A stretch of 64,000 bases of DNA from contig NW_024704742.1 in assembly GCF_018977255.1 (NCBI RefSeq), positions 137,702,001 through 137,766,000 of the forward strand, read 5' to 3'. A program made the position numbers and the translations under genes. Below the pieces are notes generated by a model. It made no database searches, was not told the DNA's origin, and was given only the letters and a program-made list of their open reading frames with translations. Origin of the DNA: Callorhinchus milii. Lineage: Eukaryota. Of this stretch, positions 5,397 through 46,172 are shown one piece after another (position 1 is the stretch's first letter; every line of letters begins with the position of its first letter).

Positions 5397-5446
5397 CTAT
5401 ACAGAGCTCCTTCTTTTCTTGGCCTCAGGATGGAGACGCCTTGAAT
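5397..5446 (-). CDS. Gene A terminal cytoplasmic exon (no Tyr motif)
   Basis: A polypyrimidine tract ending TCATAG precedes AT TCA AGG...GTA TAG, in frame after the phase-1 TM exon. The same exon occurs at 40008-39959. Confidence 0.7.
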
Positions 5447-8400: not shown

Positions 8401-11400
8401 TGGACTCCCTCTCCTCCAAAGCACTGTGACTGTGGCACGATTCTGGTATGTGTTGGGGATGGTGAAGGAGCAGGGCAGTGTGGCATCACCTCCCTTGGTA
8501 CCAGTCACTGACCGGAGCTTCTCTTCATGACCTGAGACAGGAACAGGATTGGAATAGTGCAGAGCAGTCAGTGTGACAGAGTACATGTTACACACTGTAA
8601 ATCCTGGATATGTTACCTGGTCTTCATGGCACCATCTCCCTCAGGCCTGTGCTCCTCACTCACCCTCTATGAGCCTATGTCCAACACAATGTCTCACACA
8701 CAAAACATGGTATTTTTATAGGACCAATAACATGATTACTGGCAAGTGTAGTGACTGTTTTGCAGCGAATTTACTCAGATGAAGGACCCCCAATGCTTAT
8801 GAAGGCTCTGGGATGCTGCCCTGCATGAGGAGTGCTGTATAAATGCACGTTATCGTTGTTGTTGAACAATCTAATTCAGATGGAGGTTTGGTGGTGTAAA
8901 GAAAATCCCTCCTCATGTTTTGGGGCAGTCGGTTTCCTGATACGTACAGATATCTGTCACCGTTGTTAAGAGTATCTAAACCAGAGAGAGACTTCCACAT
9001 ATATATCCACTCTGAGTATGTATTTCAGAGAGTATTATGTTTGGGGCAATTTGGAGTTCAACCAGCGAAAGCAGCATAATAATAATCATAATAATACCTG
9101 GATTTGATATCTCGCTATTGAGACATCTCAAAGCGCTTCACCAAATATACTGTCCAGTGAATTGACTGTACATCTTGTGGGAGAAATACACCAGTCAATT
9201 GTGCCAGCAGCGATCCAACAACCGTCATGGATTGAGAGAGCAAATTTTTAAAAAATTATTTTTGGAGAGATTTTTGCCCCCAGAGGTGATCCACCAATCG
9301 ACTAAACTACCGGCTTCCTACTTACTGCGAGGTAAACAGAGGCGTGTATAGCAAGGAAACTTGCTCAAGGTTTCTTCCTGCCCAGGAATCAAACCCAAGT
9401 CCTCTCGCTTGTGAGGCGAGTGCTCTAACCACTACACTACAGGACTCCACAGCACAGTTGGCCAGTGACGGCACTGTGTGGCAAGCTTCCTGCTGCTTGT
9501 GTAGATCTGTGGTGTTATTGAGCTGAGTGGGAATGGTCGCGCCCAGTGACTGGTCTGCCAATGAGGCTGATGCCAAATCAGCAGTGCCCTGGAGTACTGC
9601 GACCGCCTGGCTCAGGAACCAGACTAGAGACCCCCACAGAGGGTTGACTCCTGCCCGACGTCCTGTGGCCTTGTATGTCACTGTGGAGCCAGTCCCTGCT
9701 TTACACCGGCTTTTTTGTGGTGGGAGAAACATACAGGGCAGTTTGTGACCTGCCAGCCACCTTGATGTTCTCGAGATCCATTGCCGCGTCCCAGGCTTAC
9801 TGATCACCAGCTGCTGAATCCAGGTCCTCATGTGAGGGGCCTCGGCAAATAGACAACCCACAGTGAGGCCGCCTCAGCCTCCAGGTGCTCAGTGACAGGT
9901 CAGTGTACAGCACAGCCCTCCCTCCCTGCAGCCGCTCACTCACTGTCACCTGTCAGCTCCCTGCTACACACCGTCCATCACAGGGACCACTGGCTCTCTA
10001 TTGCCCGTCCTGGGACGGGACACTTCCCACTGACTCCGGCCCCAGTGAGGAACGTCACGTCTCATTCCCACTTCCCATCGTTCCTCACCTGTAACAATTA
10101 GACGGGTTCCGTGTCCAGTTTCAAACTTTCCGTCCTCACCCTGGAGCTCCACACAACAGGACCATAGCTTATTATTGTCCTCTCCCCTCAGTTGGTTTAT
10201 CTCTATTGTTGCGTCGTTCCTCCTCGGGTTCCCAATCACTCGGTGTCGTTCTCCCTCGTTTACATCAATGACATTTTGATACTTTCGCTGTGAATCCGGC
10301 CCATAATTTGTATATTTAATATACACAGGACCAGTCCTTCCTGCCTTCCACATGATGGTGATGTTCCCTGTGTATCTGGGGTGAGGGTGAGTGAACTTGC
10401 AGTACACGGTGACCGGTGACCCTAACCTGCCGGTCACTGTATCGGGGGTCTCCATCGTCCAGCCATTCCTACTGAGCCCTGTGAGGACACACATGGTGTA
10501 ATGTGAACCAGAACACAACATAAAAGCAAACAGGTAACACTGAGCTTGTACAAGAGCTTGGTTAGGTCACAGCGGGGAGTAATGTGGATAGTATTGCGAT
10601 CCCCACTGTAAGAAGGATAAAAAAGTGATGGAAAAGTTGCAGCTTAGATTCACTGCGATGTCCCCAGGGTTTAGCGGTTTAAGTTTGTAAAGGAGATTTG
10701 AAAGGTTGGGACTTTTTTAGCAAACTGAGAAGGTTAGGGGTGATCTGATAGCGGTCGCTAAACCTCAAAGAGTCACAAAAGATTTTCCTCTCATCAGCCA
10801 GTCAGTCACAAGAGGAATAAATCTAAAACAATCACAAAAAATTAACTAAGAGAGGGTTAGAAACCTTCACTTTACACAGAGAGGATGGGATTGTGGAATC
10901 CTCTGCCACAGACGGAGTTGAGGCAAAGTCCGTCAATAATAATAATGAGTCTTGCATTTCATACAGGTTTGATCACATCTTCGAGATGTCCCAAAGTGCA
11001 TCATAGAATACACTGTAAAGTGAATTGACAGTATATTTTGTGGGCGAAACGCATCAGCCAATTGCGCAGCTGTGTCTCACAAACAGTCGTGGATTGAACG
11101 ACATATTTATAATTTTTTTTGAAGGAATTATTCCCCACGAAAATGTGAACCGCCATTCAACTAACAACCAGGTTCCTACTTACTGCTAAGATAACAGAAG
11201 CGTGTGGTGAGAGGAAAATTGCCCAACTTATGCTAATCGAACCCAAGTCTTGCCTGCGAGGCGAGTGCTCTAACCACTGAGCTACAGGAATCCACAGTCA
11301 AGTCCATAAAAGGGAATTGTTGTTCGAAGTGTATTAAATTAAATGGTGTTGGGGGGAGGGAGAGTGAGCGAGACACAGGGTGGGACTGAGCATCATGTGA

Positions 11401-12042
11401 ACAAAATAAAACTTGTCAAAATGGAATGAACGGGCGGAGCGGCTGTTTTCATGCTATAAAAATACCACCATTTTAACAGTCAGAAACGGGAGTAGAATAC
11501 AGAGCTGCAGTGAGAACCAGCGCCGGCACAGACACTTTGTTTGCGGTCAGCCGGGTGTCTGATAACAGAGGAAACTCATCACTGCGCTGAAGAGTCTTCA
11601 AACCAAACTACTCAGAATTCCACTTATATCTGGAAACGTCTGTGTGTCTGGAATGAGATGTGCACTTTGTCCCCAGAGGGACGTATCCTGCTCACCTCAT
11701 CACAGACAGTATTCTGCGCAGGATGGGAAGATCACCGATTCAACAACAAATTGTATAGCACCTTTCATGTCGGGAGGACATCAAGAGAGGGGTGAGGGGA
11801 AGGGACTGTGGGATGGAGTTCCAAAGGGTGAGGCAAACACTTACACTGTGGGGCTCAGTGAGTAACACAGTTCTGTTCAGTTTAGAGACGGGAATCTTAT
11901 TTGCAGGAGATATCACATGACTGTAATTATTCCAGTAAAAGGTAAAGCAGTAATTAAAGCCAGTCAGGTTTCTGATTGGAAAGTACGTACGGAAGGCCGA
12001 GGCTGACAGGACCAGGGTACAGAGCACAGCTCCCAGCATCAT
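5397..12042 (-). CDS. SIGLEC15-like: Gene A: Siglec-15-like activating-type receptor (leader-V1-V2-C2/TM with Lys-short tail), 409 aa
   Basis: Exons 12042-11991, 10478-10089, 8531-8163, 6559-6191 and 5446-5397 all have AG/GT boundaries and phase-1 junctions, totalling 1230 nt in one frame. V1 motifs CKFTHPHPRYTG and GNPRRND, C2 motif CSAEGEPP and [10 protein letters not shown] resemble Siglec-15 as I recall it. The tail is [16 protein letters not shown]. Confidence 0.85.
6191..6559 (-). CDS. Gene A C2-set Ig plus transmembrane exon (TM Lys codon 6240-6242)
   Basis: CTGAAG acceptor; APAVILSL...[14 protein letters not shown]...GTYRCVAEN...[29 protein letters not shown]; GTTTGT donor; 369 nt. 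Confidence 0.88.
6603..7125. repeat. About 71-bp minisatellite just upstream of the C2 exon acceptor
   Basis: Units recur at about 6608, 6679, 6782, 6857, 6928, 6999 and 7070. Copy number differs in genes B (about 1), C (about 4) and D (about 5). Confidence 0.9.
8163..8531 (-). CDS. Gene A second V-set Ig exon (V2)
   Basis: TCTCAG acceptor and GTAAGA donor, 369 nt. V-set hallmarks: ATLPCSF, VLWRR, DASLKI, DTGRYFC. Confidence 0.9.
9090..9450 (-). mobile_element. tRNA-derived SINE with L2-like 3' tail
   Basis: Head GGAGTCCTGTAGTGTAGTGGTTAGAGCACTCGCCTCACAAGCGAG with A/B boxes and an (ATT)n tail. Many copies, e.g. about 285-660, 4320-4640, 10930-11300, 14100-14400, 29820-30145, 31630-31990, 43430-43790 and 52750-53105. 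Confidence 0.75.
10089..10478 (-). CDS. Gene A N-terminal Siglec-15-like V-set exon (V1; F-strand Arg replaced by Cys)
   Basis: CTCACAG acceptor and GTGAGG donor, 390 nt. WTMETP...YCKFTHPHPRY...MWKAG...GNPRRND...WSCCVELQG. Confidence 0.9.
11991..12042 (-). CDS. Gene A leader exon
   Basis: [17 protein letters not shown] plus GTACGT donor. It splices in frame to V1 (C|GG = Arg). Confidence 0.85.
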
Positions 12043-12460
12043 CGTCCCTCACTCAGGACACACTCCTTCCCCGCGCACGTCTGCCTCGCACTGGCACAGA
12101 TGGTCACCCTTCTCTTTCCTTCCTCCTCTCGTTCTGTGGTCACCACCAGAGCTCCACCCCACACATCCGCTTTGTTCTGATGCTCTGTAATGTTTCTCCC
12201 CAACACTAACCTGCACTCGTCCCCTGTCACAGTAACTGGGTGACTTTTAATCCTCTATTACATTTCACACCCTTGTTATATTGGCCACGTTTACATGGGA
12301 ACATACAAATTTGTTGGCGAAGGAACGCAAAGGTCCATCTCGTTCGCCTTCCACCATCCTGGCAGTCGCTTGACATGTCATTTCCCAAACCATACAGTGT
12401 ATCCTGAGATATTATTTTTCTTGCAGAAATCTATCTAATTTGTTCTTGAAACAAACAACT

Positions 12461-13203
12461 ATGGAAGAAGCAAACAAAATTGGGGGAGGGATCAGAAGGA
12501 AATGACCCAAGCTGGACCGAAGTCACAAATAAGGAGAATATAAGTGGTCAGGGACCTAATACAATTATAGAACAGAAGGGTGAAAAGACTTTCAAAAATA
12601 AAATGAGAGGAGCAACGAATAATAATGAATGAAACTGTCTGTACAGCAATGTTCACAGCATCCGAAATAAAACAGGAGGACTGAGGCAGTAATTCGTAGT
12701 GAGGAAACAGATATATTTGGGATTACTGAAACGTGGCTACAGAAAGACCAGGACTGGCAATTAAACATTGCAGGTGTAACATATTTAGATAGGATAGAGA
12801 TGGGGTAAAAGGGCCATGGAGTAGCTGAACATGTTAGGGATAACATCATGGCAGTAGAAAAAAGGAAATCGGGAGATCAAAACCAGGGGCCATCAATATA
12901 AAATTGTCACAAGTGGATTAAATAGGGAAGTTAGACGTTTGCAGAAATGTCTTCACACACAGAGTAGTGAGAATGTGGAACATCTGCCACAAGGAGTTGT
13001 TGAGGCTAATAGCATCGATGTATTTAAGAGGAAGCTGGAGAGGTACTTGAGGGAGAAAGGAATAGAAGGTGATGCTTGATGGCTTAGTTGAGGAAGAGCA
13101 GGAGGAGGCTCATGTGGAGCTAAACACCGGCATAGACCAGTTGGGCTGAATGGCCGGTTTCTGTGCAATATATTCTAATGTTTTCTAATGTATTCTAACA
13201 CAA
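12461..13203 (+). mobile_element. CR1-clade LINE fragment (endonuclease N-terminus plus 3' tail) upstream of the gene A leader
   Basis: Reads as ...NVHSIRNK...GITETWLQK.... The empty site is seen at about 32850. An inverted copy lies at about 55840-56525. Confidence 0.7.
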
Positions 13204-14473
13204 TTTGCTTCCACCGTCTCCAAAGGGAACCCTCCATAAGTTACTACTCTCTCACTGAAGTAGTGAACAAATGTTTGAATAAGCGTTACATTTCTGTATT
13301 TGATGCAGAATCTGTAATGTTAGAAAGTTTCAAAGGTCTTCAACAGGTACTGACTGTGTTCGTGGACAAACACAGCAACCACTTTGCACACAGCCATATC
13401 ATCTGAAAGAAATAAAAAGAGTTTTTTGTTAAAGCGCTGAATAAGGTGAAGGACAAAACAGAGATGAGGTTCAGGGCAGTTCTGAGATAAAGTGTGTCGG
13501 AGCTGCTGAAGGGAAAGGTTGAGAGTTTGCACGTGTCGGCACACGCTGGAGACAGTAGATATCATGAGTCGGCAAGAACAGTGATCAGAAGAGCGCTGAA
13601 TTTTGATGATTGTGGGTGGATTAAAAGCAGGAAGGGTGGAATTTCAGAGGGAATCCATATGGAATTAGTTGCAGTTTAAGACAGTTACTGAGGAAAGAGA
13701 TGTGGCTGTGAAAACAGGTTTTAATGAAAACATCAAACACAAGAAGGGAAACAGATAGCTAAGAAGGTGAGCAGGGTAAAAGGGAAGAAAGAAAGTCACG
13801 GTGAAGTGAAGAGCAGAACTTCTTCAAGGTAGGCATTCCTAGAAGACAATTAGTCTACAATTCATCTGGTTGATTGTCGCGCAGGAAGCCGGGAGGAACT
13901 CGCTTCTCTTTTCCATCAGTGTCGAGGGATCTTTAATGTCAGGCAAACAGGTCCTTGGTTTAACGTCTCATCTGAAGGACGGCACCTGGATGGTGAACAC
14001 CACAACCCGCTGACCCAGAGGCGAGAGTGCTACTGACTCACCAGACTGACACCTGATGAGTAATGGGTGCACAGAGGCAGCTGTGGGAGAAGACGAGGAG
14101 AGATAATGACAATTTATTATAATATATTTTGTGGGTGAAACGCGGCAGATAATTGCGCACATCAGTGTCCCACAAACAGTCGTGGATTGAGTGACCAAAT
14201 CAAAAAAGAGAAATGTTTTGAAGGGATTGTTACCCCCAGAAAAGCGATGCACCAATCGACTAACAACCGGGTTCCTTGTTACTGCTGTGTAAACACCGGC
14301 GGTGGAGTTAGGAAACTTGACTACCGTTTGGGTCGGCCCGGAATCGAACCCGGGAACTGTTGCTTGCGACGAGTGCTGTCACCACTGAACTACAATACTC
14401 CATTACTGTCTCACAGGTTCGCCTGACTGCGGCCACATTAACATACACCACCGAGCCATACGTTCACAAGCAT

Positions 14474-14479
14474 TTTATT
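14474..14479 (-). terminator. Candidate poly(A) signal of gene B (AATAAA)
   Basis: Occupies the homologous position to 4715-4720 within a diverged shared 3' segment. Confidence 0.4.
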
Positions 14480-14579
14480 CAGTCAATTTCAGAACAGAAT
14501 ATTTACTGTGGAGATCAGGTTCAGTAGGAAAAATAGTGAATAAGACAATCTGATTCAATGCCTTGGAATCAACGATGCA

Positions 14580-14960
14580 GTGGGTTTGGGGGGAGAGTGT
14601 GTGAGGGGGGAGGCAATGAGGTTGGTATTGAGGAGGGGGACAGTGAGGCATGTCAGTGAGGGGGTAGTTCGGTGGTCAGTCAGTGGGGCAGCGAGGAGGG
14701 GGTAGTGAGGGGGGGGCAGTGAGGGGGGGCAGTTAGGGGTTGATAATGAGGGGGGGCAGTGAAGGGGGGCACAGTGAGGGGGGGCGGTGAAGATGGGGCG
14801 GTGAGATGGGAGCACTGAGAGGAGACAATGAGGGGATAGTGCGGGGCGGTGAGGGGTGGGCAGTGATGAGGGGCAGTGAGGGGGCAGAAATGAGTGGGAA
14901 GTGATTGGTCCAGTGAGGGGGTGGCAATGAGGGGGAGCAGAGTGGTGGCCAGTGAGGTGG
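14580..14960. repeat. G-rich low-complexity tract (CAGTGAGGGGGG-like units)
   Basis: Repeated CAGTGAGGGG words. Confidence 0.7.
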
Positions 14961-15569
14961 GGGCACTGAAGGGGGAGAACTTGCTGCAAACTTTCTCCCT
15001 CGCCCTCGGCTTTGCCCAGTTAGGAGCCCACAGTTGGTGAGGAGACCCACTTGCCTTCCCCTCAGCTCGAGAGCGACTTCCTGACAGTCTGCAGGAACAG
15101 CCGCCATAATCAATGATGTCCTCCCACATTAAGAGAGAATAAGAGAATTATTTAGGGAGGACAAGTTTGCAGGGCTATGGGGAGAGAGCGGGGGAGGGGG
15201 ATTGATTTGGAAGCTGTTTCAAAGAGCCGTCACAGACACGATGGGTCGAATGGCCTCCTTCTGTGGTGTATAATTCTATGATTGTGTGAATTGGCTACTC
15301 AATGCTGGAATGGCCACCAAGTGGCAGTGTGTCCCTCCTGACCGGGAATGGACTCTTCCTCTTCCAGGCCAGACCGCCACCATCTTTGATTTCCCTGAAG
15401 TGGAGATAAACACAATTGTAAATTGCAGACCTCGGGGCCGCCCGTGAATACACAGCAATAACGTGTTCACATAGAGCAGGGCCGCAAGCCACAGCCGCGC
15501 TATAAACACACTCGGACTATAATGAGCCGAGCTCTCGGGGACGGACTGTACAATGTTGATGCATTGACT

Positions 15570-16080
15570 GCTGTTCCTGATGGGGTCGATAGGCTCCATG
15601 ACCCTATCACCCCCATCCTCGCCCGACTCCACTGGCTTCCCATCACACAGAGGATACAGTTCAAGATCCTGGTCCTCACGATCAAAGCTTTCCATGGTCT
15701 TGCTGCCCCCTACCTCCGAGACCTCCTACCCCCTAGCATCCTGCTCACTCCCTCCACTCAGCAGCTTCCAGACTGCTTCATGTCCCCCGCCTCGCTCGCC
15801 CCACTCTTGGCGTCTGGACTTCTGCCACTATGCCCCCAACCTCTGGAACTCCATCCCACAATCTCTACGCCTTGCCCCCTCCCTTGCCACCCTCAAGACC
15901 CATCTCAAGACCCTCTCCTTCCACCATCCTTTCGATCTTCTTGCTCCCCCCCTGCCCTCCACACTCCGCCACCCCGACCCCCAGCTCGGGTCCGTAACTC
16001 TGTCTGACTAGCCCCTTGGGACGTCCTCCCGACGTGAAACGCACTTTACAAATGTAATTTTGTTGTTGTTGTTGTTGTTT
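15570..16080 (+). mobile_element. L2 3' fragment
   Basis: [15 protein letters not shown] motif and (TTG)n tail. Confidence 0.8.
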
Positions 16081-16153
16081 CGGGCTCGATATAAGTCACT
16101 ACAGGTCTCACCTGTATAAATGGCGGACAGCAGACTCTGGGCGGGACCAGTGT

Positions 16154-16206
16154 TCACTGCTCAGCTGATCTCCCATTCGATTTGGTGACAACAGCATAAA
16201 TCACAT
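16154..16206 (-). CDS. Gene B terminal exon with ITIM ([17 protein letters not shown])
   Basis: Strong acceptor TTTGTTTCTCTTCCAG. The phase-1 reading gives a V-x-Y-x-x-V ITIM and then TGA. Confidence 0.78.
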
Positions 16207-19200
16207 CTGGAAGAGAAACAAAATGGAGTCAGGACATGTCCCACCACTTGCTGAGAGCTCTGATATAACGTGTGACCCACGTTAAAGTCTATTAGAACTT
16301 TAATATAACTTTTCTAAGGTCCAAATGTCTCAAAGCGAATCACTGTCAAGTGTAGTGACTGTGTATTTTATCAGCAAACCTGGCGGCTAATTTGAATTCA
16401 ACAATGTCCACATACAGCCAAGAAATGGGTGACCAATTTTATTTGGAGAATTGTTGGCCCGGACACCAGGAGAGAGAAATTCCCTTCCCTTTTCCAACAG
16501 CACATTGCATTCCAGACACAGGGAAATTTCCATGTGGAGGTGACATATATATGTGGAATTCTCATTCTGGTTTGGATACTCTTGAGAAGGTGATGTTGGT
16601 TGACCCAAAAAACCTCAATAGATACAGACGGGATCTTGGTTTAACATCGCAATTAAAGGACAGCACTTCTGACAATGTAGCGCTCCTCCCAGTACTGCAC
16701 TGGAGCATCAGCCTGGACTGTGAGCTCGAGGGCCCTGATTTAGGGGCTCGAATCCCCAACCTCCTGACCCAGAGCCAGAGTGCGAGCAGCGAGGCGACTG
16801 GATACACAATAAACCAGAAAAGGCTGACAATACTCACTGTCATCAGAGGCTCTGATGGTGGAATTTGCGTACACTTGGGAAGGAGAGAGAGACAATTATT
16901 AGTAAATAATTTCAATATTGATAACATTTCCATCAGAAATGGGAATCAACTTCACAAAGAAACTATGACACTGGTTATCAAACGGAGTGCGTATATACTG
17001 TACCCGTGGAAATACAGAGAGTGGAGTGCAATGTCTGAAGCTCAGGCCCCAAAATGGGACAGAGTACGAGGAATGAACAGTGAACTGGGGATTGGTGCTA
17101 CTCCAACGCAAGTCACTGGGATCTGATGCTACTCTAATGTCAGGCCCTGGGGATTGGTGAGCACCAACCACAGAGCTAAGACTTCAGGTCTAATCTGTGC
17201 AGTGTAGTGACTGTGTGTCTGTTGGTGAACGCAGCAGCCAATTTGCACTCAGCAATGTTCCACAATCAACCGGGAAGTTTTATAACCAATTTAATCCGGA
17301 CACCCAGAGAAACTCCCTTCTCTTTTCCAAGTGCCGCGGGACATTTAACATTCACCTGAACAGGGACAGATGAGACCTCAGTTTAATATCTCATCTGATG
17401 GACGACGCCTCATACAATGCAGTGTTCCTCCTGCACCGTGCAGCCTGGATTATGTGAATAAAAGACCCAATGTGGGGCTTGAACCCACAATTATCTGACT
17501 GAGGTGAGAGTTGCTGCCGCCTGTGCCAGGCTGAGAGTTGACCCCGGACAGGAAGGGGAACGCAGACTCTTGTCGGCTGAGAGGCAAGGCAATGCTGGCT
17601 CCCCCCGTGTGATACGTTTCAAGCCAGTCAGGAAACTTGGCGTCTTGTTCGACCCTTAACTGTCCTTTCTACCCCATATCCATGCCATGACCCACCTTGG
17701 CTTCCCCCACCTACGCAACATTGCCCAACTCCCCCACTGCCTCTCCCCTCAGACTGCCGACAACTTCATACACACACTCATCACCTCAAGGCTCGACTAC
17801 AGAAAATACCTCCTTGTTGGCCTCCAAAACTCTTCCCTCCACAAGCTTCAGATCATCCAGAACTCTGCAGCTTGTGTCTTCCCCACAGCAGCTCCATAAT
17901 CCAATCATCCTCACCCACGCCCTCCTACATCTCTGACCTGCTAACACCCTATCAACCTGTTTGCTCCCTCCATTCAGCAAACTCCGGCCTGCTTCATGTC
18001 TCCAACCAGATGCCCCCCTCCATTGGCGGCCTGGCCCTACCCTTTGGAACGCCATCCCACAATCCCTTCTCCTCGCTCTCTCCACTGCCTCCTTCAAGGC
18101 CCGAATCATGACTCTCCTTTTCGTGCGTGACTTCAGCCGCCCACCTACATCTCTGTGACCCACGTTAAAGTCTATTAGAACTTTAATATAACTTTTCTAA
18201 AGTCCAAATGTCTCAAAGCGAATCACTGTCAAGTGTAGTGACTGTGTATTTTGTCAGCAAACCTGGCGGCTAATTTGAATTCAACAATGTCCACATACAG
18301 CCAAGAAATGGGTGACCAATTTTATTTGGAGAATTGTTGGCCCGGACACCAGGAGAGAGAAATTCTCTTCCCTTTTCCAACAGCACATTGCATTCCAGAC
18401 ACAGGGAAATTTCCATGTGGAGGTGACATATATATGTGGAATTCTCATTCTGGTTTGGATACTCTTGAGAAGGTGATGTTGGTTGACCCAAAAAACCTCA
18501 ATAGATACAGACGGGATCTTGGTTTAACATCGCAATTAAAGGACAGCACTTCTGACAATGTAGCGCTCCTCCCAGTACTGCACTGGAGCATCAGCCTGGA
18601 CTGTGAGCTCGAGGGCCCTGATTTAGGGGCTCGAATCCCCAACCTCCTGACCCAGAGCCAGAGTGCGAGCAGCGAGGCGACTGGATACACAACAAACCAG
18701 AAAAGGCTGACAATACTCACTGTCATCAGAGGCTCTGATGGTGGAATTTGCGTACACTTGGGAAGGAGAGAGAGACAATTATTAGTAAATAATTTCAATA
18801 TTGATAAGATTTCCATCAGAAATGGGAATCAACTTCACAAAGAAACTATGACACTGGTTATCAAACGGAGTGCGTATATACTGTACCCGTGGAAATACAG
18901 AGAGTGGAGTGCAATGTCTGAAGCTCAGGCCCCAAAGCTGGGACAGAGTACGAGGAATGAACAGTGAACTGGGGATTGGTGCTACTCCAACGCAAGTCAC
19001 TGGGATCTGATGCTACTCTAATGTCAGGCCCTGGGGATTGGTGAGCACCAACCACAGAGCTCATACTTCACAGGTCTAATCTGTGCAGTGTAGTGACTGT
19101 GTGTCTGTTGGTGAACGCAGCAGCCAATTTGCACTCAGCAATGTTCCACAATCAACCGGGAAGTTTTATAACCAATTTAATCCGGACACCCAGAGAAACT

Positions 19201-22200
19201 CCCTTCTCTTTTCCAAGTGCCGCGGGACATTTAACATTCACCTGAACAGGGACAGATGAGACCTCAGTTTAATATCTCATCTGATGGACGACGCCTCATA
19301 CAATGCAGTGTTCCTCCTGCACCGTGCAGCCTGGATTATGTGAATAAAAGACCCAATGTGGGGCTTGAACCCACAATTATCTGATTGAGGTGAGAGTTGT
19401 TGCCGCCTGTGCCAGGCTGAGAGTTGACCCCGGACAGGAAGGGGAACGCAGACTCTTGTCGGCTGAGAGGCAAGGCAATGCTGGCTCCCCCCGTGTGATA
19501 CGTTTCAAGCCAGTCAGGAAACTTGGCGTCTTGTTCGACCCTTAACTGTCCTTTCTACCCCATATCCATGCCATGACCCACCTTGGCTTCCCCCACCTAT
19601 GCAACATTGCCCAACTCCCCCACTGCCTCTCCCCTCAGACTGCTGACAACTTCATACACACACTCATCACCTCAAGGCTCGACTACAGAAAATACCTCCT
19701 TGTTGGCCTCCAAAACTCTTCCCTCCACAAGCTTCAGATCATCCAGAACTCTGCAGCTTGTGTCTTCCCCACAGCAGCTCCATAATCCAATCATCCTCAC
19801 CCACGCCCTCCTACATCTCTGACCTGCTAACACCTATCAACCTGTTTGCTCCCTCCATTCAGCAAACTCCGGCCTGCTTCATGTCTCCAACCAGATGCCC
19901 CCCTCCATTGGCGGCCTGGCCCTACCCTTTGGAACGCCATCCCACAATCCCTTCTCCTCGCTCTCTCCACTGCCTCCTTCAAGGCCCGAAACATGACTCT
20001 CCTTTTCGTGCGTGACTTCAGCCGCCCACCTACATCTCTGCCCTCCCTCACCACATCCCTGCTCCCTCCACGCTCGGGTCCTGATCCCCGATTCTCCAGC
20101 GACGTGCGACGTCCTCCCGTCTTGAAAGACACTTCACAAATGTAATTTTGTTGTTGTTTCTTACCTGAATCTGTTTGCCGGGCCGGTGCTGGGGTAACCA
20201 CACTGTAGATCACAGCAGCTTCGTCTGTCAGAGACACAACAGTCAGCTCCTTCTCCAGGTCTCTGCAGCTTCCCCTTTGCCACATTCTACCTTCCCTGGT
20301 ATTTATTTATTATTGTTTTGTTTTGGAGGGATTATTATTAGGCTCTGTGTGGAGTAAGGAAACTTGCCCAAGGTTTCACCCTCTGCGTGGAATTGAACAC
20401 AGGTGTCTCATTTGCAAAGCGAGTGCTCTAACCACTGAGCTACAGGACTCCAGACCATTCAGAATACTGCAGCTCATGTCCTTCCCCGCACCAGACTCCA
20501 TGATACCATCACCCCCACTCTCGCGCAGCTCCACTGGCTCCCAAACCCTCATTGGATAGAATTCAAAATCCTCATCCTTGCCTTCAAGGCCCTCGACAGA
20601 CTTCTGCCCTCCTATATCTCTGTGACCCGCTAACTCCTTATCAAACTGTCCACTCCCTCCACTCAGCAGGCTGCGGCCTGCTCCACATTCACCGCTCAGC
20701 CCGCCCCACCATCGGCAGCCATGCCTTCAGCCTCTCACCTACCCTTTGGAAAGCCATCCCACATTCCCTTTGCCGTGCTCCCTCCCTTGCCTCCTTCAAG
20801 GCATGTCTCAAGACTCTCTTTTCGACTGTGTGTTCGGCCACTCCGGCCCTCCACCATCCCTTACCCCAAAACCCCAGGTCCAAATCCCTGACTGTCCAGC
20901 GCCTTGGGACACCCTCCCGACGTGATACAAATGCAGTTTGCATTGTATTGTAAACCTGACAGCCAATGTGCATTCAGCAATGTCCCACAAACAGCTATGA
21001 AGTGGGTGACCAATTATGTTTGGAGCATTGTTGGCCAGGACATCAGGAGAGAGAAAGTCCCTTCTCTTTTCCAATATCACATTGCATTCCAGACACAGGG
21101 ACATTTCCATCTGACTGAGAGGTGAGAGTGCTGCCAACTGAGCCAGGCTGACAGTTAACCCCGGACAGGAGAGGGAACGCAGATCTCTGTCGGCTGAGAA
21201 CCGACACAATGCCGGCTCCGTCCCCGTGTGATACGTTTAATTACCTGAATCTGTTTGCCGGGCCGGTGCTGGGGGAAACACACTGTAGATCACAGCAGCT
21301 TCGTCTGTCAGAGACACAACAGTCAGCTCCTTCCTCCAGTTTCCCCTTTACCACATTTTACCATGTCCCAGGGTGGACGTAGCCTCTATAAGGCTCCCTC
21401 TCAGCCGTCCCAGGACAGAGCCCTGAGGTTCCCTCTCACTACAGCACCAATTGTACAATCAGAACATTTATACCCATTTGGAGGCCCTTTGACTGTGAGG
21501 CTCTGAAAGGCTCTCCCTTTAGCCCCACTCCCCTTTTCCCATTGGCTTTCCAAATATTATTGGTGACTTGGTAGGTGCATTTTGCCGACTCCCAGGTCCG
21601 GGGCACAGCTGTGAGCTGTATATTCTCCGAAATGAGGTAAGCAGGATGAGTCTCTCCGTGGAGACAGACAGAGTGAGCCATTCCATATATGGAAATTTCC
21701 ACGTGTAGGTGACTTACATGGGTGGAATTCTCAGTCTGGTTTGGATGCTCTGAAGCACAGTGATGGGTTTCTGTGTGTGAAGACACCCAGAGCCAGAGGT
21801 GAGAGGGTCACTGACTGAGCTCGGCTGAGACCCAGTGACGGGATATTGAAAGCACGGGGTCAAAATTGTGGCATCGCAAATCGAGACAGAACAGTTACCG
21901 TCTCCTGCAGGCGGCTGAGGTCGGACCATGTCATTGCTAACCATTTGATGACTGAAAAAAAGAGAAAACGTTTTATATTGTACATTTTATAGAGGTTGGA
22001 AGATAAAACCTTATTTGTAATAATGCTTACATTTCATTCAGCGTCTTTCACGTCAGAAGGACAGACGTTCATAACACTTCACAGTGTAGGAGTCAGTAAT
22101 TAATATGTTAAATAATATCTTAAATGATATTTGCGATGTTTATATATTTGAAACATATGATCAATCTCATATGAGGGGAGTCGGTTGTGATGAGCTTTGT

Positions 22201-25200
22201 AGAGTGGAAATAAAAGCCTATTTATAAGCAACAAACTGTTTTCATTCCTTATCAGTCATTTTCTCATGGAAATATGTTCTGCTGCTGGAGAGAGCCTGTG
22301 TTGCATTAGTTTTTACAAGGGAACCATCTTGCAAAAGTGAAAGGTCGCCTCATCAACAGCTCGAGGATGGAGTGGAGGGAGAGGTGAGAGCAAAGATGGT
22401 CAGCAACAACCCATGGCATAAACTGAGATCGATTCGAAGGAGAAAAAAGAAATTGGAACTTGGAGTCGCGAATCATATTCCAGCTTCTAAAGAAGGAAGA
22501 TCAAGATTGTGATTTAAACAACTCTAAATGTGCAATAATACCTGGATATGTTTGGGTGATATCCAACTGGGAACCGTACAATAATACTTGGATCCCTTTT
22601 GATGGACATATATTTGGATTAAAAAGGATACATTAAAATGGACGTTACATTGGACATTGCTCCTCTATCTCTCCCACACGATGTGATTAATAAGTCTTAA
22701 ATCGTTGTGAACTACAGGATACGTCAGCATAATTCGATGCATTTTAGTTACTTATAACCATTATTAATCTGAATTAATAAACCTTGGTTAATTGCATAAC
22801 ATTTTTGTCAGTCCTTACTTCGCCACATGGTAAATAAATTAACCCTCACAACAGGATTTAGTGTAAAGTGTAGTGATGGCGTATTTTGTAAGAATGCACC
22901 AGACAATGTGCACACAGGAACTTCCCCACAAACAATCATGGAGTGAATGATCAAGTTTATTGAGGGGATTGATGGCCAGGGCACCGGGAGACACCATCTT
23001 CTCTGAAGGGTCCAAACCTCAGCTCGGCCACAACAGTGTGTTTAGTTCTGGGCAGCGAGTTACAGGAAGGATATAAAAGGCCGAGCCTGGGGGACGAGGG
23101 GACCATAGGAACAGTTGAATAGGAAGGTCTTCAGGCACGACCTGAAGATGGAAAAGGCAATGTGGTGGGATAGAGGAAGAGTGTTCCAGGGTTTTGGAGT
23201 TTTTGGCTGAAAGCTCGGCCACCAACGGTGTAACGGAGAAAACGAGGGACATGCTGAAGCCAATCGAGGGGAGGCAGGGGCGGTAAGCGATTCGGGAAGG
23301 TCGGGAGGTGCCAGAGCATGAAGGGATTTGAAAACGAGTCTGAGGATCTTGAAATCGATCCGATTAGCAATGGGGAGCCATTGACTGGCTTGACTGCTGT
23401 GATGGGGGATACAGAGCTTAGTACAGGTGAGTAAGTGGGCAGCAGAGTATTGGATCAGCTGGATCCTGTGTATGATGGCACTGGAGAGAGCGGCAAAGAG
23501 GGCGTTTGAAAAGGTGAGTCGGGAGGGCAGAGCTAAACCACATTGCAAGGGCTCGAGTATGGAGTGGAGGGAGAGGTGAGAGCAAAGATGGTGAGCAACA
23601 ACCCATGGCAGAGCTTTGGCAAGGAAGGGCAGGTTGGAAATGGGTCGGTAATTTATGTGTTTGAAAGGTGCTTTATAAGGGCAAGTTGTTGTTTTACACT
23701 TGACACAACCTCTTTGTGTGTGTGTTTGTGTGTGTGTGTCTGTCTGTGTGGGAGTGGGTGTTTGTCTGTCTGTGTGTATTTGTGTGTGTGTGTGTGTGTG
23801 TGTGAGTGAGTGTGTGTGCGGGCAGTGTGAGTTGGGGTGAGTTGGTGTGTTTCTATGTGTGTGTGAGTGTGGACTCTGTGCTGCTGAGATAGCAGGAGCT
23901 GAGTGGGAAGAATCGCTGCTCTCAGTAGTGCAGAGTAGACACCAGTTGGTCATTTGGGGACGGTGTCTCTTTGGGCTTTTCTGGCTGCAAAGTTAGATGT
24001 TTGGCAACGGAATGCGATGGTCTCGAGTTCGGTTCAGTGCTGCGAAGGTCTGCAGTGGGTCTGCACTTGGAAGGGCAGAGCAGTCACTGGGGGCAGGGAA
24101 TCCTCCCACTCAGCTCCTGCTAACCCTGCAAGTCAAAGCCCTAACAGTGAGGGTGGTCCAAGCTGGAGAGGGAAGCAGGAAGCTTTCCAGATACAGGGCT
24201 CAACAGCAATTAGGAACTTGGAAGTGGATGTAACAGTGAAGGGATTAGAAAGACGCTCTCACCTCTCTGAACACTGACAGCAATGTCCGACACCATCACC
24301 TAAAGAGACCAAAGAAAGATGAGAGATTGATTTAGATGGTTTGCTGATGACGTTCGTTAGTGCACATGTTATTATAGGGAAAGACTTGTGCAAACCCTCC
24401 TCTTCCTGTTGTGTGGTGTAACCATGGTTACTGAAGCAGGAAGCCAGGCTCATATCACCATCCAAAGCCATTAGCTCCACTGTGTCTGTGCTGGTGCTCT
24501 CTCCCCCACTGGAGCTCTCTACCCTAATCCCATCCCTGCTCTCTCTCCCCATGGCGTCTGTGCTGGTGCTCTCTCCCCCACTGGAGCTCTCTACCCTAAT
24601 CCCATCCCTGCTCTCTCTCCCCATGGCGTCTGTGCTGGTGCTCTCTCCCCCACTGGAGCTCTCTACCCTAATCCCATCCCTGCTCTCTCTCCCCATGGCG
24701 TCTGTGCTGGTGCTCTCTCCCCCACTGGAGCTCTCTACCCTAATCCCATCCCTGCTCTCTCTCCCCATGGCGTCTGTGCTGGTGCTCTCTCCCCCACTGG
24801 AGCTCTCTACCCTAATCCCATCCCTGCTCTCTCTCCCCATGGCGTCTGTGCTGGTGAAGGAGAGATTGATAGCTCCAATAATTGTTACTGGGCACTTTGT
24901 GTGAGGATAATAATAATAATAAACCTTGCATTTGATATAGCGCTTTTCACGTCTTCTCGGCATCTCAAAGCGCTTCACAGAACACACTGTAAAGTGAATT
25001 GACTGTACATTTGTGCAGCCAATTGCGCACAGCAATGTCCCACAAACAGTCGTGGATTGATAATGACCAATTTATTATTGTTTTGTTTTGGAGGGATTAT
25101 TATTAGGCTCTGTGTGGAGTAAGGAAACTTGCCCAAGGTTTCGCCCTCTGCCTGGAATTGAACCCCAGGTGTCTCGCTTGCAAAGCGAGTGCTCTAACCA

Positions 25201-28200
25201 CTGAGCTGCAGGACATCAGGTTTCCATGTGTTTCTCTCTGCCTCTCTAACTGTATGTGGGGATTTATCTCCTAACAATCAATGGATATTGCGACACCCTG
25301 TCTGTGCTGGCGCTCAAGTGAATAAGGTAATAGGAGGATATCTGATGATTAGGTAACAGCAGAGGGAATATCTCGCCTGTGGTTATCAGGATCTGGGGCG
25401 ACCCGTCCTGTGTCTGAGCAGATACCCAGTGTGTGGATACACAGCGTTACACAGCAATTACAATTGAAAGTGAATGCTGTTATGGAGGTAACCGCGGCAG
25501 ATAATCTGCTGAGCCAGAGGTGAGAGTGCGAGCGGCTGAGACAGACTCACTTGGAATAAACATTACCTTTGTCTGTAAACACCTACCTCTCTTTACCCGC
25601 CAGATAATGATGGCAGTCACCAGAACGAGCAGCACCACAATGGATACCACGATATATACAGTCTGACCACCATTGCTCTGTGGTCCAGGTGCGAGGATGT
25701 CTCGGGCGTCTCTGCCCTGTGTGTTCTCAGCTACACAGTGGTAAGTTCCCCTCAGCCTCGGGCCCCGGATCTCCCCCACGGTTTGATGCTTGTCCGGTAC
25801 ATGTGTGACTGGCGTGTGGCTGGTGTTAATGGGCAGCGTGTTATTCTCAGGGTCGATCCATGTGATGTTGGCCGGTGGTTCCCCCTCAGCCGAGCACACA
25901 ATGTCACCTCCGGCCACGAGGGACAGACTCAGGATAACGGCCGGAGCTTCAGGTATAAAGAAACACAGAGATATTCAAACCAAACCACTGTCCCCATCGT
26001 GTCTGTGCTGGTGCTCACTCCCCCACTGGAGCTCTCTACTCTAAGTCCTTCCCTTTTGCAGTAGATTTTCATGTTGTTCACAATCTTCCCTTTCAAACAC
26101 AAAATTCCTTTTTCCAATATTCAAGTCTATTCGGGTCCCAGGGCCTTGGGACTTCAACCTTCACTTCACCCCCTCCTGCTCTACCTCTGCTGACTTCTCC
26201 TCCCTCATCTTCTCCCTCAACATCTCCCTCCACATCCACTCTGCCACCCAATTCCGCGGTTACCCCCTCAACCTGGAGATCACTTGGGGTCGTCTTGTCT
26301 CGTATCTCACCATCACCGACAAAGCCATCTGGGACCATCACTTCATCTCCCTTAACTCCTCAATCCCTCTCCCCACCGCCATCCAACCAACTTCAATCAC
26401 CCACCACCTCTGGAAAAAAATCTCCCTCTCCCTCTTTGCCTGTCTACTCACGGACATCATAAACCTCTCTCTGCCCACTTGTACCATTCGCACCCCTTTA
26501 ATATCATTCATCATCACTCCTCTCCTTAACAATACCTGCCGTGGACCCATTCCTGTTCTCAAATTGCAGCCCTATCTCCAACCTCCCTTTCCTCTCCAAA
26601 GTCCTGGAAAGAGTCGATGCTTCCTATCTTCGTCTTTCCTTTCCAGCCACTCCCTTCACGAACCCCTCCAATCAGGTTTCCATGCCACCCACAGCATGGA
26701 AACAGCCCTGGTCAAAGTGACAAATGACATTCTGTTCATCGGCAACGAGCGCTGCCTCTGCCTCCTCATTCTCCTTGACCTCTCTGCTGTCTTTGGCACT
26801 GTTGACCATTCTATCCTCATCTGCCGCCTCTTCTCTCACCTCAACCTTCACGGTTCTGTCCTTGAATAGTTGATATCGTACCTCTCACAATGCCTCCACT
26901 TAATCTCCAAAAACATTTTGTCCTCTAGCCCCGCACCGTCTCGTGCGGAGTTCCTCAGGGCTCTGTCCTTGGTTCCCTCCTCTTCAATATCTATATGCTC
27001 CCTCTTGGTGACATCATCCGCAGACATGGGGTCAACTTCCACATGTATGTGGATGACACCCAACTCTCCTCTCTGCCTCCACCCTTGACTCCAGGACCCA
27101 CTACTCTCCTGACACAATGTCTGTCAGACATCAAGTCCTGGATGAGAGCGAACTTTCTACAGTTGAACGTCGACAAGATCGAGGCTCTCCTGATTGGCTC
27201 CCGTCAGCGACTCCTCACCTCAGGCGCTGACAGCATTACCGTCCATGTTGCACACTCCACCTCACTGAGCAGCACGGATCCTTGGGGTCTTGCTGACCCT
27301 CAACTTTCTGCCTTTCTGTCCCACATCTGTGCCATGACCTGCTCTGCCCTCCCCTGCATCCACAATATCGCCCGGCACCGCCACTGTCCCATACCACAAG
27401 CCACTGAAACCCTCATACAGCTTTCATTGCATCCCGGCTTGACTGCAAACTCCTTGTTTGTCGACCTCATCACCTCCTCCCTCCATAGTCTACAGAACAG
27501 TCAGAACTCTGCAGCTCATGTCCTCTCCCACACCATACCCTCTAAGCCCCATCCTGGCCCGACTTCACTGGCCTCCCAACACACAGAGGATACAGTTCAA
27601 AATCCTAGTCATCACCTTTCAAAGCCCTTGAAGGCCTCGCTCCCCCCTACCCCTGTGACCTCCTAACACACTATCAACCTCCTCAATCCCTCCGCTCAGC
27701 GGGCTCCAGCCTGCATCACGTCCCCCGCCTGCACTCCCCACCAATGACGGGCCGGCCTTCAGCCACTCTGCACCCACCCTCTGCAACTCCATCCTGCAGT
27801 GCCTCCACATCACCTCTGCCTTGCCTCTTTGAAGACGCATCTCAAGACCCTCCTCTTCAACCGTGTTTTTGATCAACACCCTTCCCCCATTGCCCTTCAC
27901 GCTCCCCAATCCCGACCCCCAGCTCGAGTCCAACACACCAACTTTCCAGGGCTTTGGGCCTGACATGAAAGACAATATACAAATTTACTTTGTTGTATTT
28001 TGTTTCTTTAGATATTTGTTAATAAGAAATATCTAAGATCAAATGTGAAAAAAAATTAGTATTTCAGACATTTGATAACCACAAGAGCACAAGAGAGGTT
28101 TGTGTGAAGAAAGTGTCCGGCCTCAACCACCCTTCCTGGTAACCGCTTCCAGCCATTAATTACCCTCTGGGCAAAGAAATACTTCCTGTTCTTATTTTGA

Positions 28201-35545: not shown

Positions 35546-35587
35546 AGTAATTAAAGCCAGTCAGGTTTCTGATTGGAAAGTACGTAC

Positions 35588-35639
35588 GGGAGGCAGAGGC
35601 TGACAGGACCAGGGTACAGAGCACAGCTCCCAGCATCAT
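35588..35639 (-). CDS. Extra intact leader exon upstream of gene B (distal alternative first exon or orphan)
   Basis: Intact ATG, signal peptide and donor, with no V exon of its own between it and gene B. Confidence 0.55.

Positions 35640-46133: not shown

Positions 46134-46172
<39 letters not shown>

What the first reader, a model, noticed from the sequence alone, without database searches (positions are those of the whole stretch)
16154..21304. Inhibitory tail assembled from tandem-duplicated, symmetric-phase mini-exons
Seen: two 60-nt ITIM exons (1080 bp apart), two 36-nt YAN exons (1883 bp apart) and a terminal VIYAVV exon. The four internal exons are all phase 1-1, so any subset can be skipped without frameshift. 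Established: ITIM = (I/V/L/S)xYxx(L/V) recruits SHP-1/2, and pYxN is the Grb2-SH2 consensus. Inference: the number of Tyr motifs is tunable by alternative splicing and by copy-number change, an exon-level dial for signalling strength.
Basis: partly seen in the sequence, partly recalled or inferred. Interest (0 to 1): 0.75.

Follow-up and report, generated by a model that had tools for sequence, protein, structure and literature searches.

The report
Modular inhibitory tail, shark Siglec-like receptor
The flagged stretch is the 3' half of an elephant-shark immune-receptor gene related to Siglec-15, whose inhibitory signalling tail is built from small, recently duplicated exons; the exons are real, but the design is familiar for this class of receptor.

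Summary
On the minus strand there are two 60-nt VIY-motif exons (1080 bp apart), two identical 36-nt YAN exons (1883 bp apart) and a terminal VIYAVV exon. All have AG/GT splice sites and all four internal exons are phase 1-1.

The window is Callorhinchus milii chromosome sequence. It holds a duplicated cluster of Siglec-15-like receptors, some activating (Lys in the transmembrane segment) and some inhibitory (ITIM tail). The flagged exons complete a 506-aa inhibitory gene that RefSeq does not annotate with this tail.

RefSeq models of paralogs use the same exons: ITIM-YAN-terminal in one, ITIM-ITIM in two others. The 36-nt YxN exon is conserved in the shark Heptranchias perlo.

Exon copy number varies among paralogs (ITIM 1-2, YAN 0-2). 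Heptranchias isoform models differ by one 72-nt Tyr exon.

Alternative splicing of this particular gene is untested, and one ITIM copy looks degraded (+3 Phe, weaker donor).

Modular, alternatively spliced Tyr-motif tails are already known from PECAM-1, CEACAM1, KIR and LILRB, and ITIM plus pYxN from CD22. Verdict: a new member of a known kind, of modest interest.

The parts
32402..32453 (-). Leader exon ([17 protein letters not shown]), phase 0->1, of inhibitory 'gene 2'
   Evidence: Identical to the N-terminus of RefSeq P0021.
30786..31175 (-). V-set domain 1 exon (390 nt, phase 1-1), Siglec-15-like, retains the CRVE arginine
   Evidence: Best PDB match is human Siglec-15 7ZOZ, E=7e-20.
28857..29240 (-). 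V-set domain 2 exon (384 nt, phase 1-1)
   Evidence: Pfam V-set match at 5.8e-23.
25587..25946 (-). C2-set domain plus uncharged transmembrane segment in one exon (360 nt, phase 1-1), ending ...IIIWRVKR
24263..24299 (-).
   Evidence: Homologous to [12 protein letters not shown] of P0022 and identical to P0031.
21899..21951 (-).
   Evidence: Homologous exon is used in P0022, P0028 and P0031.
21245..21304 (-). ITIM exon a (60 nt, phase 1-1): [20 protein letters not shown]. Has +3 Phe and a GTAATT donor.
20165..20224 (-). ITIM exon b (60 nt, phase 1-1): [20 protein letters not shown], a canonical VIYSVV motif
   Evidence: 59 of 60 nt identical to the single ITIM exon of LOC103188797 (99% over 102 nt with flanks).
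18154..20040 (.). Tandem duplication unit 2 (1.887 kb), carrying YAN exon a
18721..18756 (-). YAN exon a (36 nt, phase 1-1): [12 protein letters not shown], a pYxN-type motif
   Evidence: Homologous to VYANSARARASDD in P0022 and VYENCSTRASED in Heptranchias.
16271..18155 (.). Tandem duplication unit 1 (1.885 kb), carrying YAN exon b
16838..16873 (-). YAN exon b (36 nt, phase 1-1), identical to YAN exon a including its flanks. Reads [12 protein letters not shown] when it follows YAN exon a.
16154..16206 (-). Terminal coding exon: (N/D)[16 protein letters not shown] plus TGA stop; a canonical ITIM
   Evidence: 94% amino-acid identity (16 of 17) to the C-terminus of P0002.
57030..58167 (-). Paralogous ITIM exon pair of 'gene 4' (58108-58167 and 57030-57089) = RefSeq LOC103188796. 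Both exons are included in its model.

Best explanation
**Where it is.** Region 16154-21304 is the distal cytoplasmic-tail portion of an intact, minus-strand, 11-exon gene (32453..16154, 506 aa). It lies in the Callorhinchus milii Siglec-15-like receptor cluster.

**The protein.** It reads leader, V-set, V-set, C2-set plus uncharged transmembrane segment, then a tail of seven small exons. The tail carries five tyrosines:
- VIYSVF: +3 Phe, outside the ITIM consensus.
- VIYSVV: ITIM.
- Two YAN motifs: pYxN, Grb2-SH2 type.
- VIYAVV: ITIM.

**How it most likely works (inferred).** It is the inhibitory partner of neighbouring activating paralogs that have a Lys in the transmembrane segment. After Src-family phosphorylation, the ITIMs would recruit SHP-1/2 and the YxN motif would recruit Grb2. 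This combination is documented for CD22.

**How it arose.** The doubled exons come from local tandem duplication: a very recent 1.9-kb duplication for YAN and an older or converted duplication for ITIM. All these exons are phase 1-1, so duplication, loss or skipping never breaks the frame. The family therefore shows birth-and-death of Tyr-motif exons. Each YAN exon also adds 12 residues between the last two ITIM tyrosines, giving 17, 29 or 41 residues for 0, 1 or 2 copies.

**Shown:** exon anatomy, homology, duplication, and variation among paralogs.

**Inferred:** expression of this tail, motif function, and regulated splicing.
For: **Anatomy**
- Exon coordinates, canonical splice sites and an unbroken 506-aa reading frame.
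- Pfam V-set and Ig domains.
- Best PDB relative is human Siglec-15 (7ZOZ, E=7e-20), with CRVE aligned to CRVE.

**Source**
- The window is C. milii GCA_018977255.1 MU249832.1, a 100% match over 50,461 bases.

**Paralog models that use the same exons**
- P0022/P0023 tail...[87 protein letters not shown].
- P0028 has two ITIM exons followed by the terminal exon.
- P0031, the in-window gene 4, has both ITIM exons.

**Copy-number differences** were read from paralog DNA.

**Deep conservation**
- The Heptranchias perlo tail is built from 72-, 72-, 72-, 72-, 36- and 72-nt phase 1-1 exons.
- Its 36-nt YEN exon shares 29 of 36 nt and the cccaag|TGTA...GACA|gtgagt context with the YAN exon.
- Two of its 72-nt exons are 100% identical, while their flanks are 86.5% identical.
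- Isoform X2 lacks exactly one of these exons.

**Paired activating genes** with Lys in the transmembrane segment are in the same window. Their architecture matches chondrichthyan proteins annotated as Siglec-15.

**Literature**
- CD22 combines ITIMs with a pYxN Grb2 site (PMC5302901).
- Mammalian Siglec-15 has K274 and R143 and lacks an ITIM (PMC13711574).
Against: - No transcript or annotated protein carries this gene's own tail.
- The RefSeq gene LOC103174418 spans window 53857..5397. Its two recorded products start at different leaders but both use the gene 2 V1 and V2 exons joined to the gene 1 C2-TM(Lys) exon, skipping the inhibitory C2-TM and tail exons.
- No AATAAA or ATTAAA lies within 1.6 kb after the stop, and a SINE is inserted about 75 nt downstream.
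- ITIMa carries two derived changes: +3 Val->Phe and loss of the +5 G in its donor.
- Motif function (SHP and Grb2 binding) is inferred from consensus only.
- The region is highly duplicated and lies near an assembly gap, so mis-assembly of the 1.9-kb repeat cannot be fully excluded.
Confidence: 0.8

Rival explanations
1. Neutral birth-and-death without a regulated 'dial'. The duplicated exons are by-products of a very unstable, repeat-rich locus. One copy of each pair is constitutively included or skipped, and some are decaying. Tyr-motif number is then not tuned by splicing in any functional sense.
For: - ITIMa of this gene has a non-consensus +3 Phe and a GTAATT donor. The five other copies have Val and G at +5.
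- The second ITIM of LOC103188801 has Tyr->Cys.
- Gene 4 has lost its YAN and terminal exons and ends in a cryptic 'GNPP*' exon.
- The YAN duplication is only about 0.7% diverged, too young for selection to have acted.
- The whole window is a mosaic of segmental duplications and transposable elements.
Against: - In Heptranchias, duplicated 72-nt Tyr exons are 100% identical while their flanks are 86.5% identical. This argues that duplicates can be maintained.
- RefSeq isoforms X1 and X2 there differ by one such exon.
- The two C. milii ITIM exons plus about 30 nt of flank are 98% identical, while the rest of their introns no longer aligns.
Confidence: 0.4
2. The 1883-bp tandem duplication, and hence the second YAN exon, is an assembly artefact, for example two haplotypes or mis-stacked reads laid in tandem.
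For: - The window is dense in near-identical repeats.
- The paralogous copy sits next to an N gap and an inverted block.
- Paralogs elsewhere carry zero or one YAN exon.
Against: - The two units differ by 13 substitutions with a 9:4 transition-to-transversion ratio, plus 4 indel columns. They are not identical and the differences are not homopolymer errors.
- The sequence is contiguous, with no N across the junction.
Confidence: 0.12
3. The inhibitory half of gene 2 is a silent relic. Transcripts starting at this gene's leader, V1 and V2 exons splice across about 22 kb to the downstream activating C2-TM(Lys) exon, as in the RefSeq models, and the ITIM and YAN exons are not expressed.
For: - RefSeq products P0001 and P0021 of LOC103174418 have exactly this structure.
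- No database protein carries the gene 2 tail.
- There is no nearby poly(A) signal, and a SINE lies just after the stop.
Against: - All eleven exons are intact, with canonical splice sites and an open frame.
- Gnomon models in 94-99% identical paralog arrays are prone to cross-paralog joins.
- The near-identical gene 4 is modelled with its inhibitory C2-TM and both ITIM exons.
Confidence: 0.15

Closest known systems
Siglec-15 (human/mouse)
   Same: - The N-terminal V-set domain is the best PDB match (7ZOZ, E=7e-20).
- CKFT(H/P)PHPRY, GNPRRND and CRVE blocks are shared, including the Arg aligned with essential R143.
- The AEGEPP block of the C2 domain is shared.
- Neighbouring paralogs have a transmembrane Lys like K274 (PMC13711574).
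   Different: - This gene has a second V-set domain and an uncharged transmembrane segment.
- It has a long tail with ITIM and YxN motifs. Mammalian Siglec-15 lacks an ITIM and signals through DAP12 (PMC13711574).
- The C2 and transmembrane regions share one exon here.
CD22 (Siglec-2)
   Same: An inhibitory Siglec whose tail combines several ITIMs that recruit SHP-1 with a pYxN Grb2-binding tyrosine (PMC5302901).
   Different: - There is no detectable tail sequence homology.
- CD22 has seven Ig domains.
- The motif order and number differ.
- Binding is untested here.
PECAM-1 (CD31)
   Same: The cytoplasmic domain is encoded by a series of short exons (9-16) that are alternatively spliced. Skipping the 19-aa exon 14 removes a signalling tyrosine (PMC2132561).
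   Different: - PECAM-1 exons are not recent tandem duplicates of one another.
- Splicing is experimentally documented there and only inferred here.
Paired activating/inhibitory IgSF families with alternatively spliced tails (KIR, LILRB, CEACAM1)
   Same: These are multigene clusters with copy-number variation. They have activating forms with a charged transmembrane residue and ITIM forms. Extensive splicing alters the cytoplasmic tails (PMC6288254, PMC12827074, PMC11646291).
   Different: - The ectodomain lineage is different (Siglec-15-like).
- The host is a cartilaginous fish.
- Here the Tyr-motif exons themselves are duplicated.
Chondrichthyan 'Siglec-12-like' / uncharacterized LOC proteins (Heptranchias perlo XP_067838215.1; C. 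milii LOC103188797, LOC103188801, LOC103188796)
   Same: They share the same family and tail exon set. RefSeq already predicts ITIM-YAN-terminal and ITIM-ITIM tails.
   Different: The window gene has the highest module count seen (2 ITIM-type, 2 YAN and a terminal ITIM). Its tail is not in any annotated product found.

Membership tests
Siglec-15 family | N-terminal V-set Ig domain homologous to Siglec-15 | tested here: met
   phmmer against PDB: 7ZOZ Siglec-15 is the top hit, E=7.2e-20, query residues 5-130. Pfam V-set match. Chondrichthyan homologs are named Siglec-15 or Siglec-12 by NCBI.
Siglec-15 family | Conserved sialic-acid-binding arginine (human R143, in the motif CRVE) | tested here: met
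   The alignment places SCRVEL opposite FCRVEF, and R143 is described as essential in PMC13711574. This is not met in the neighbouring activating genes 1 and 3, which read SCCVEL.
Siglec-15 family | Transmembrane lysine (K274) for DAP12 pairing, short tail without ITIM | tested here: not met
   The gene 2 transmembrane segment [21 protein letters not shown] has no charged residue, and the tail carries ITIMs. The feature is met by genes 1 and 3, which read ...[12 protein letters not shown]....
Siglec-15 family | V-set + single C2-set ectodomain architecture | tested here: not met
   Two V-set exons precede the C2 exon. The same V-V-C2 layout is found in other chondrichthyan 'Siglec-15' proteins.
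Siglec-15 family | Binds sialylated glycans | not testable with these tools
   Requires glycan-binding assays.
ITIM-bearing inhibitory immunoreceptor | Type I IgSF membrane protein with at least one cytoplasmic (I/V/L/S)xYxx(L/V/I) motif | tested here: met
   VIYSVV (exon 20165-20224) and VIYAVV (exon 16154-16206) fit the consensus. VIYSVF (exon 21245-21304) fails at +3.
ITIM-bearing inhibitory immunoreceptor | Phosphorylation-dependent recruitment of SHP-1/SHP-2 | not testable with these tools
   Needs phosphopeptide pull-down or co-immunoprecipitation.
Grb2-docking pYxN site (as in CD22 Y828) | Tyr with Asn at +2 in the cytoplasmic tail, conserved among relatives | tested here: met
   YAN occurs twice here. 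It is YAN in LOC103188797 and YEN in Heptranchias, in an orthologous 36-nt exon. CD22 is the precedent (PMC5302901). Binding itself is untested.
Alternatively spliced modular cytoplasmic tails (PECAM-1 type) | Tail encoded by several short exons of compatible phase | tested here: met
   There are seven tail exons. Four are phase 1-1, and a 37+53-nt pair is jointly symmetric. 32 of 64 subsets keep the frame, including all 16 subsets of the four symmetric exons.
Alternatively spliced modular cytoplasmic tails (PECAM-1 type) | Isoforms differing by inclusion of tail exons are actually produced | tested here: inconclusive
   No product with this gene's tail was found in the databases. Indirect support comes from Heptranchias X1 versus X2, which differ by one 72-nt exon, and from Leucoraja X1 versus X3, which differ in tail 3' ends. 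These are Gnomon models, not reads.

The most novel reading that the evidence does not exclude
In cartilaginous fishes, the Siglec-15 lineage is not a single DAP12-coupled activating receptor as in mammals. It is an expanding family of paired activating and inhibitory receptors.

The inhibitory tails evolve by birth-and-death and differential splicing of phase 1-1 Tyr-motif mini-exons: a 60- or 72-nt ITIM-type exon and a 36-nt YxN exon. The YxN exon is shared by a holocephalan and an elasmobranch, so it is presumably more than 400 Myr old.

Exon number would set both motif valency and the spacing between ITIM tyrosines (17, 29 or 41 residues), which would make it a genuine exon-level signalling rheostat.

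One lead comes from my memory only and was not tested. The short tail of human Siglec-15 contains a YxN-type tyrosine that could be a vestige of this exon.
Probability: 0.3. Interest if true: 0.5.

Novelty: new member of a known kind. Interest (0 to 1): 0.3.

Why it matters
**Practical value.** The work corrects an annotation. An intact 506-aa inhibitory Siglec-15-like gene in the elephant-shark reference has no annotated product carrying its tail. The RefSeq model for this locus joins exons of different paralogs instead.

**Biological value.** The locus shows that the Siglec-15 lineage, which is purely activating in mammals, has ITIM-bearing partners in a chimaera. It also gives an unusually clear snapshot of Tyr-motif exons being duplicated, degraded and lost among very young paralogs.

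**Limits.** The underlying principle is already established in mammalian receptors. That principle is symmetric mini-exons, ITIM plus Grb2 motifs, and alternatively spliced tails. The finding therefore extends known biology to an early-branching vertebrate rather than revealing a new mechanism.

Tried and rejected
1. It keeps the frame, but paralog proteins show two intervening exons of 37 and 53 nt. Including only one of them gives a premature stop.

2. I searched for annotated or transcript-derived proteins carrying this tail. One search used the tail region of the full protein and one used the tail alone. They found only P0002 and P0031, and nothing with two YAN exons.

4. Exact look-ups of P0002, P0005 and P0011 were not on record. 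P0028 and P0029 were used instead.

5. I ran tblastn with the Heptranchias and Leucoraja tail modules against the window to look for further hidden Tyr exons. Only the YAN and terminal exons matched. A 'SESTLYNSV' hit at 34151-34195 was rejected because it has no usable splice sites and sits outside any gene model.

6. A YAN relic in LOC103188801 was sought and not found. The segment is absent there.

7. A poly(A) signal after the stop was sought. None lies within 1.6 kb.

8. Literature searches for elephant-shark or cartilaginous-fish Siglec-15 with ITIM terms returned nothing relevant in the held library. This is weak evidence of novelty only.

9. The N run at 54307-54331 was left untouched. 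The fetched copy of the same record also carries 25 N.

Full report
**What is in the sequence**

The flagged interval is read on the minus strand.

| Exon | Coordinates | Length | Splice context | Encodes |
|---|---|---|---|---|
| ITIMa | 21245-21304 | 60 nt | ctgacag\|ACGAAG...TTCAG\|gtaatt | [20 protein letters not shown] |
| ITIMb | 20165-20224 | 60 nt | same acceptor, donor gtaaga | [20 protein letters not shown] |
| YANa | 18721-18756 | 36 nt | cccaag\|TGTACGCAAAT...GATGACA\|gtgagt | [12 protein letters not shown] |
| YANb | 16838-16873 | 36 nt | identical to YANa | same (M for V after YANa) |
| Terminal | 16154-16206 | 53 nt | ttccag\|ATGTGATTTATGC...CAGTGA | (N/D)[16 protein letters not shown] |

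The spacings of 1080 and 1883 bp are exact. The four internal exons are phase 1-1.

The repeats are true duplications and not chance.
- The YAN exons sit in a 1.885-kb tandem duplication, 16271-18155 versus 18154-20040. The two units are 99.1% identical and differ by 13 substitutions (9 transitions, 4 transversions) and 4 indel columns.
- The ITIM exons share a 93-nt block at 98% identity. The rest of their introns has been overwritten by SINE-like repeats.

**The gene they belong to**

Upstream on the same strand are four further coding exons:
- a leader exon (32402-32453);
- two V-set exons (30786-31175 and 28857-29240);
- an exon encoding a C2-set domain plus an uncharged transmembrane segment (25587-25946).

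- 24263-24299, 37 nt, phase 1->2, encoding [12 protein letters not shown];
- 21899-21951, 53 nt, phase 2->1, encoding [18 protein letters not shown].

All eleven exons have AG/GT boundaries and join into an open 506-aa reading frame.

I enumerated all 64 subsets of the six internal tail exons. Thirty-two keep the frame and reach the normal stop. All 16 subsets of the four symmetric exons are tolerated. The 37- and 53-nt exons must be included or skipped together.

**Identity of the locus**

The window matches Callorhinchus milii GCA_018977255.1, record MU249832.1, at 100% over 50,461 bases. The closest proteins are C. milii 'uncharacterized LOC' proteins and chondrichthyan proteins that NCBI names Siglec-15 or Siglec-12.

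Against solved structures the best match is human Siglec-15 (7ZOZ, E=7e-20). The CRVE arginine aligns with the arginine that the literature calls essential (R143) (PMC13711574).

The window holds four genes, all on the minus strand, as a ~35-kb segmental duplication of an activating-plus-inhibitory pair.
- Genes 1 and 3 have a Lys in the transmembrane segment, like mammalian Siglec-15 K274.
- Genes 2 and 4 have an uncharged transmembrane segment followed by ITIM exons.

The finding is therefore the tail of the inhibitory member of a paired-receptor family.

**Are the mini-exons real coding exons?**

Yes, by homology to annotated models.

- RefSeq LOC103188797 (XP_042192088.1) ends ...[87 protein letters not shown]. 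This is the same exon order with one ITIM and one YAN exon. Its genomic locus carries exactly one copy of each.
- LOC103188801 uses two ITIM exons and then the terminal exon. Its DNA has no YAN exon.
- Gene 4 of this window is RefSeq LOC103188796, and its model includes both ITIM exons in tandem.

The 36-nt exon is also conserved outside this species. In Heptranchias perlo the orthologous exon, ctcattcccaag|TGTATGAAAACTGCAGCACCAGAGCCTCTGAGGACA|gtgagt, has the same length and phase. It shares 29 of 36 nt (my count) and keeps Tyr-x-Asn (VYENCSTRASED).

The whole Heptranchias tail is built from phase 1-1 exons of 72, 72, 72, 72, 36 and 72 nt, followed by a terminal exon.

**Evidence bearing on the 'dial' interpretation**

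Copy number does vary, but I could show this only among paralogs.

| Gene | ITIM exons | YAN exons | Terminal exon |
|---|---|---|---|
| LOC103188797 | 1 | 1 | present |
| LOC103188801 | 2 | 0 | present |
| Gene 2 (this finding) | 2 | 2 | present |
| Gene 4 | 2 | lost | lost |

The ITIM pair of LOC103188801 is 87-89% versus 96-97% similar to the window copies. The window pair is 98% alike. This suggests the exon was duplicated, or converted, more than once.

For alternative splicing there is no direct evidence in this gene. Neither a tail-restricted search nor a tail-only search found any protein with its tail. The RefSeq gene that overlaps it (LOC103174418, window 53857..5397) is recorded with products that join the gene 2 V1 and V2 exons to the gene 1 C2-TM(Lys) exon.

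Indirect support comes from two observations.
- Heptranchias isoforms X1 and X2 differ by precisely one 72-nt Tyr exon.
- That exon and its distant duplicate are 72/72 identical while their flanks are 86.5% identical. This points to selection or conversion acting on duplicated Tyr exons.

Three observations count against a finely tuned dial.
- ITIMa of gene 2 reads VIYSVF, with Phe at +3 outside the consensus, and has lost the +5 G of its donor. The five other copies keep both.
- The second ITIM of LOC103188801 has Tyr->Cys.
- Gene 4 has lost its YAN and terminal exons and is modelled with a cryptic 'GNPP*' end.

**Most likely mechanism**

- Shown: an intact gene for a V-V-C2 type I membrane protein. 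Its tail carries two canonical ITIMs, one degraded ITIM and two YxN motifs.
- Inferred from established knowledge: phosphorylated ITIMs recruit SHP-1/2 and pYxN recruits Grb2. CD22 combines both (PMC5302901).
- Inferred: because every Tyr-motif exon is phase 1-1, unequal recombination and exon skipping can add or remove motifs without breaking the frame.
- Each YAN exon adds 12 residues between the last two ITIM tyrosines. The spacing is 17, 29 or 41 residues for 0, 1 or 2 copies (derived). YAN copy number would therefore change ITIM spacing as well as Grb2-site number.

**Comparison with what is known**

- Short-exon tails with alternative splicing that removes signalling tyrosines are classic for PECAM-1, where exons 9-16 encode the tail and exon 14 is the key case (PMC2132561).
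- They are also documented for CEACAM1 (PMC11646291), KIR (PMC6288254) and LILRB (PMC12827074).
- Phase 1 symmetry is the general rule for IgSF exons (my own knowledge).
- Mammalian Siglec-15 lacks an ITIM and pairs with DAP12 (PMC13711574).

ITIM-bearing relatives with an extra V-set domain are therefore a departure from the mammalian picture. I found no paper in the held library that describes them. NCBI already predicts such proteins in several chondrichthyans.

**Verdict**

The structure and the evolutionary copy-number change hold. Regulated splicing remains untested.
- Novelty: a new member of a known kind.
- The useful by-products are a corrected gene model and a clear example of Tyr-motif exon birth-and-death in an early-branching vertebrate.
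- Interest is modest, at 0.3.

Noticed in passing
window 54307-56525 and 55800: Gene 4 (RefSeq LOC103188796) is 99% identical to gene 2 down to 56525. It then runs into an inverted copy of 12492-14611, followed by the N gap at 54307-54331. It lacks YAN and VIYAVV exons. Its RefSeq model ends in a cryptic exon 'GNPP*' ending at window 55800. This is either a real rearrangement or a mis-oriented assembly block. The gap was not filled.
   Followed up: partly
window 5397-53857: RefSeq gene LOC103174418 spans 48 kb. Its recorded 414-aa products start at a leader at about 53857 or at 32453, then use the V1 and V2 exons of gene 2 joined to the C2-TM(Lys) exon of gene 1. The inhibitory C2-TM exon (25587-25946) and the whole ITIM/YAN tail are left without an annotated product. 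This is probably a cross-paralog model.
   Followed up: partly
window 10100-10200 (gene 1 V1), 44300-44400 (gene 3 V1), 30840-30860 (gene 2 V1): The arginine aligned with the sialic-acid-binding R143 of human Siglec-15 is kept in inhibitory gene 2 (SCRVEL). It is Cys in both activating genes (SCCVEL) and in LOC103188801. Paired members may therefore differ in ligand binding.
   Followed up: partly
window 1-64000: A segmental duplication of about 35 kb carries an activating-plus-inhibitory gene pair: genes 1 and 2 versus genes 3 and 4. Identity is 94-99% and offsets are 34-37 kb, with many LINE and SINE insertions.
   Followed up: partly
window 44818-46047: A perfect 88-nt x 14 tandem array (100% matches) sits immediately upstream of the gene 3 V1 exon, in the 5' flank where genes 1 and 2 still resemble each other.
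   Followed up: no
window 24484-24856, 60083-60381, 6741-7123, 41180-41449, 61221-61558: 71- and 72-nt minisatellites flank the C2-TM exons. In gene 2 the 72-nt array lies in an open 270-codon minus-strand frame that runs in-frame into the 37-nt exon.
   Followed up: no
window 47048-49593 and 50010-52557: An inverted pair of LINE-like elements is 97.3% identical. One carries a 560-codon reverse-transcriptase-like ORF (50999-52678, minus strand).
   Followed up: no
window 16077-16153: About 75 nt after the stop codon, the 3' flank that is conserved among paralogs is interrupted by a SINE tail of (TTG)n type. A CAG|GTGAGA donor-like site is conserved 45 nt after the stop in all three paralogs, so the 3' UTR may be spliced.
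   Followed up: no
L004 (Heptranchias perlo CM068640.1) 20939-21010 and 36209-36280: Two 72-nt Tyr-motif exons 15 kb apart are 100% identical, while their flanks are 86.5% identical. RefSeq isoform X2 skips the first of them.
   Followed up: yes
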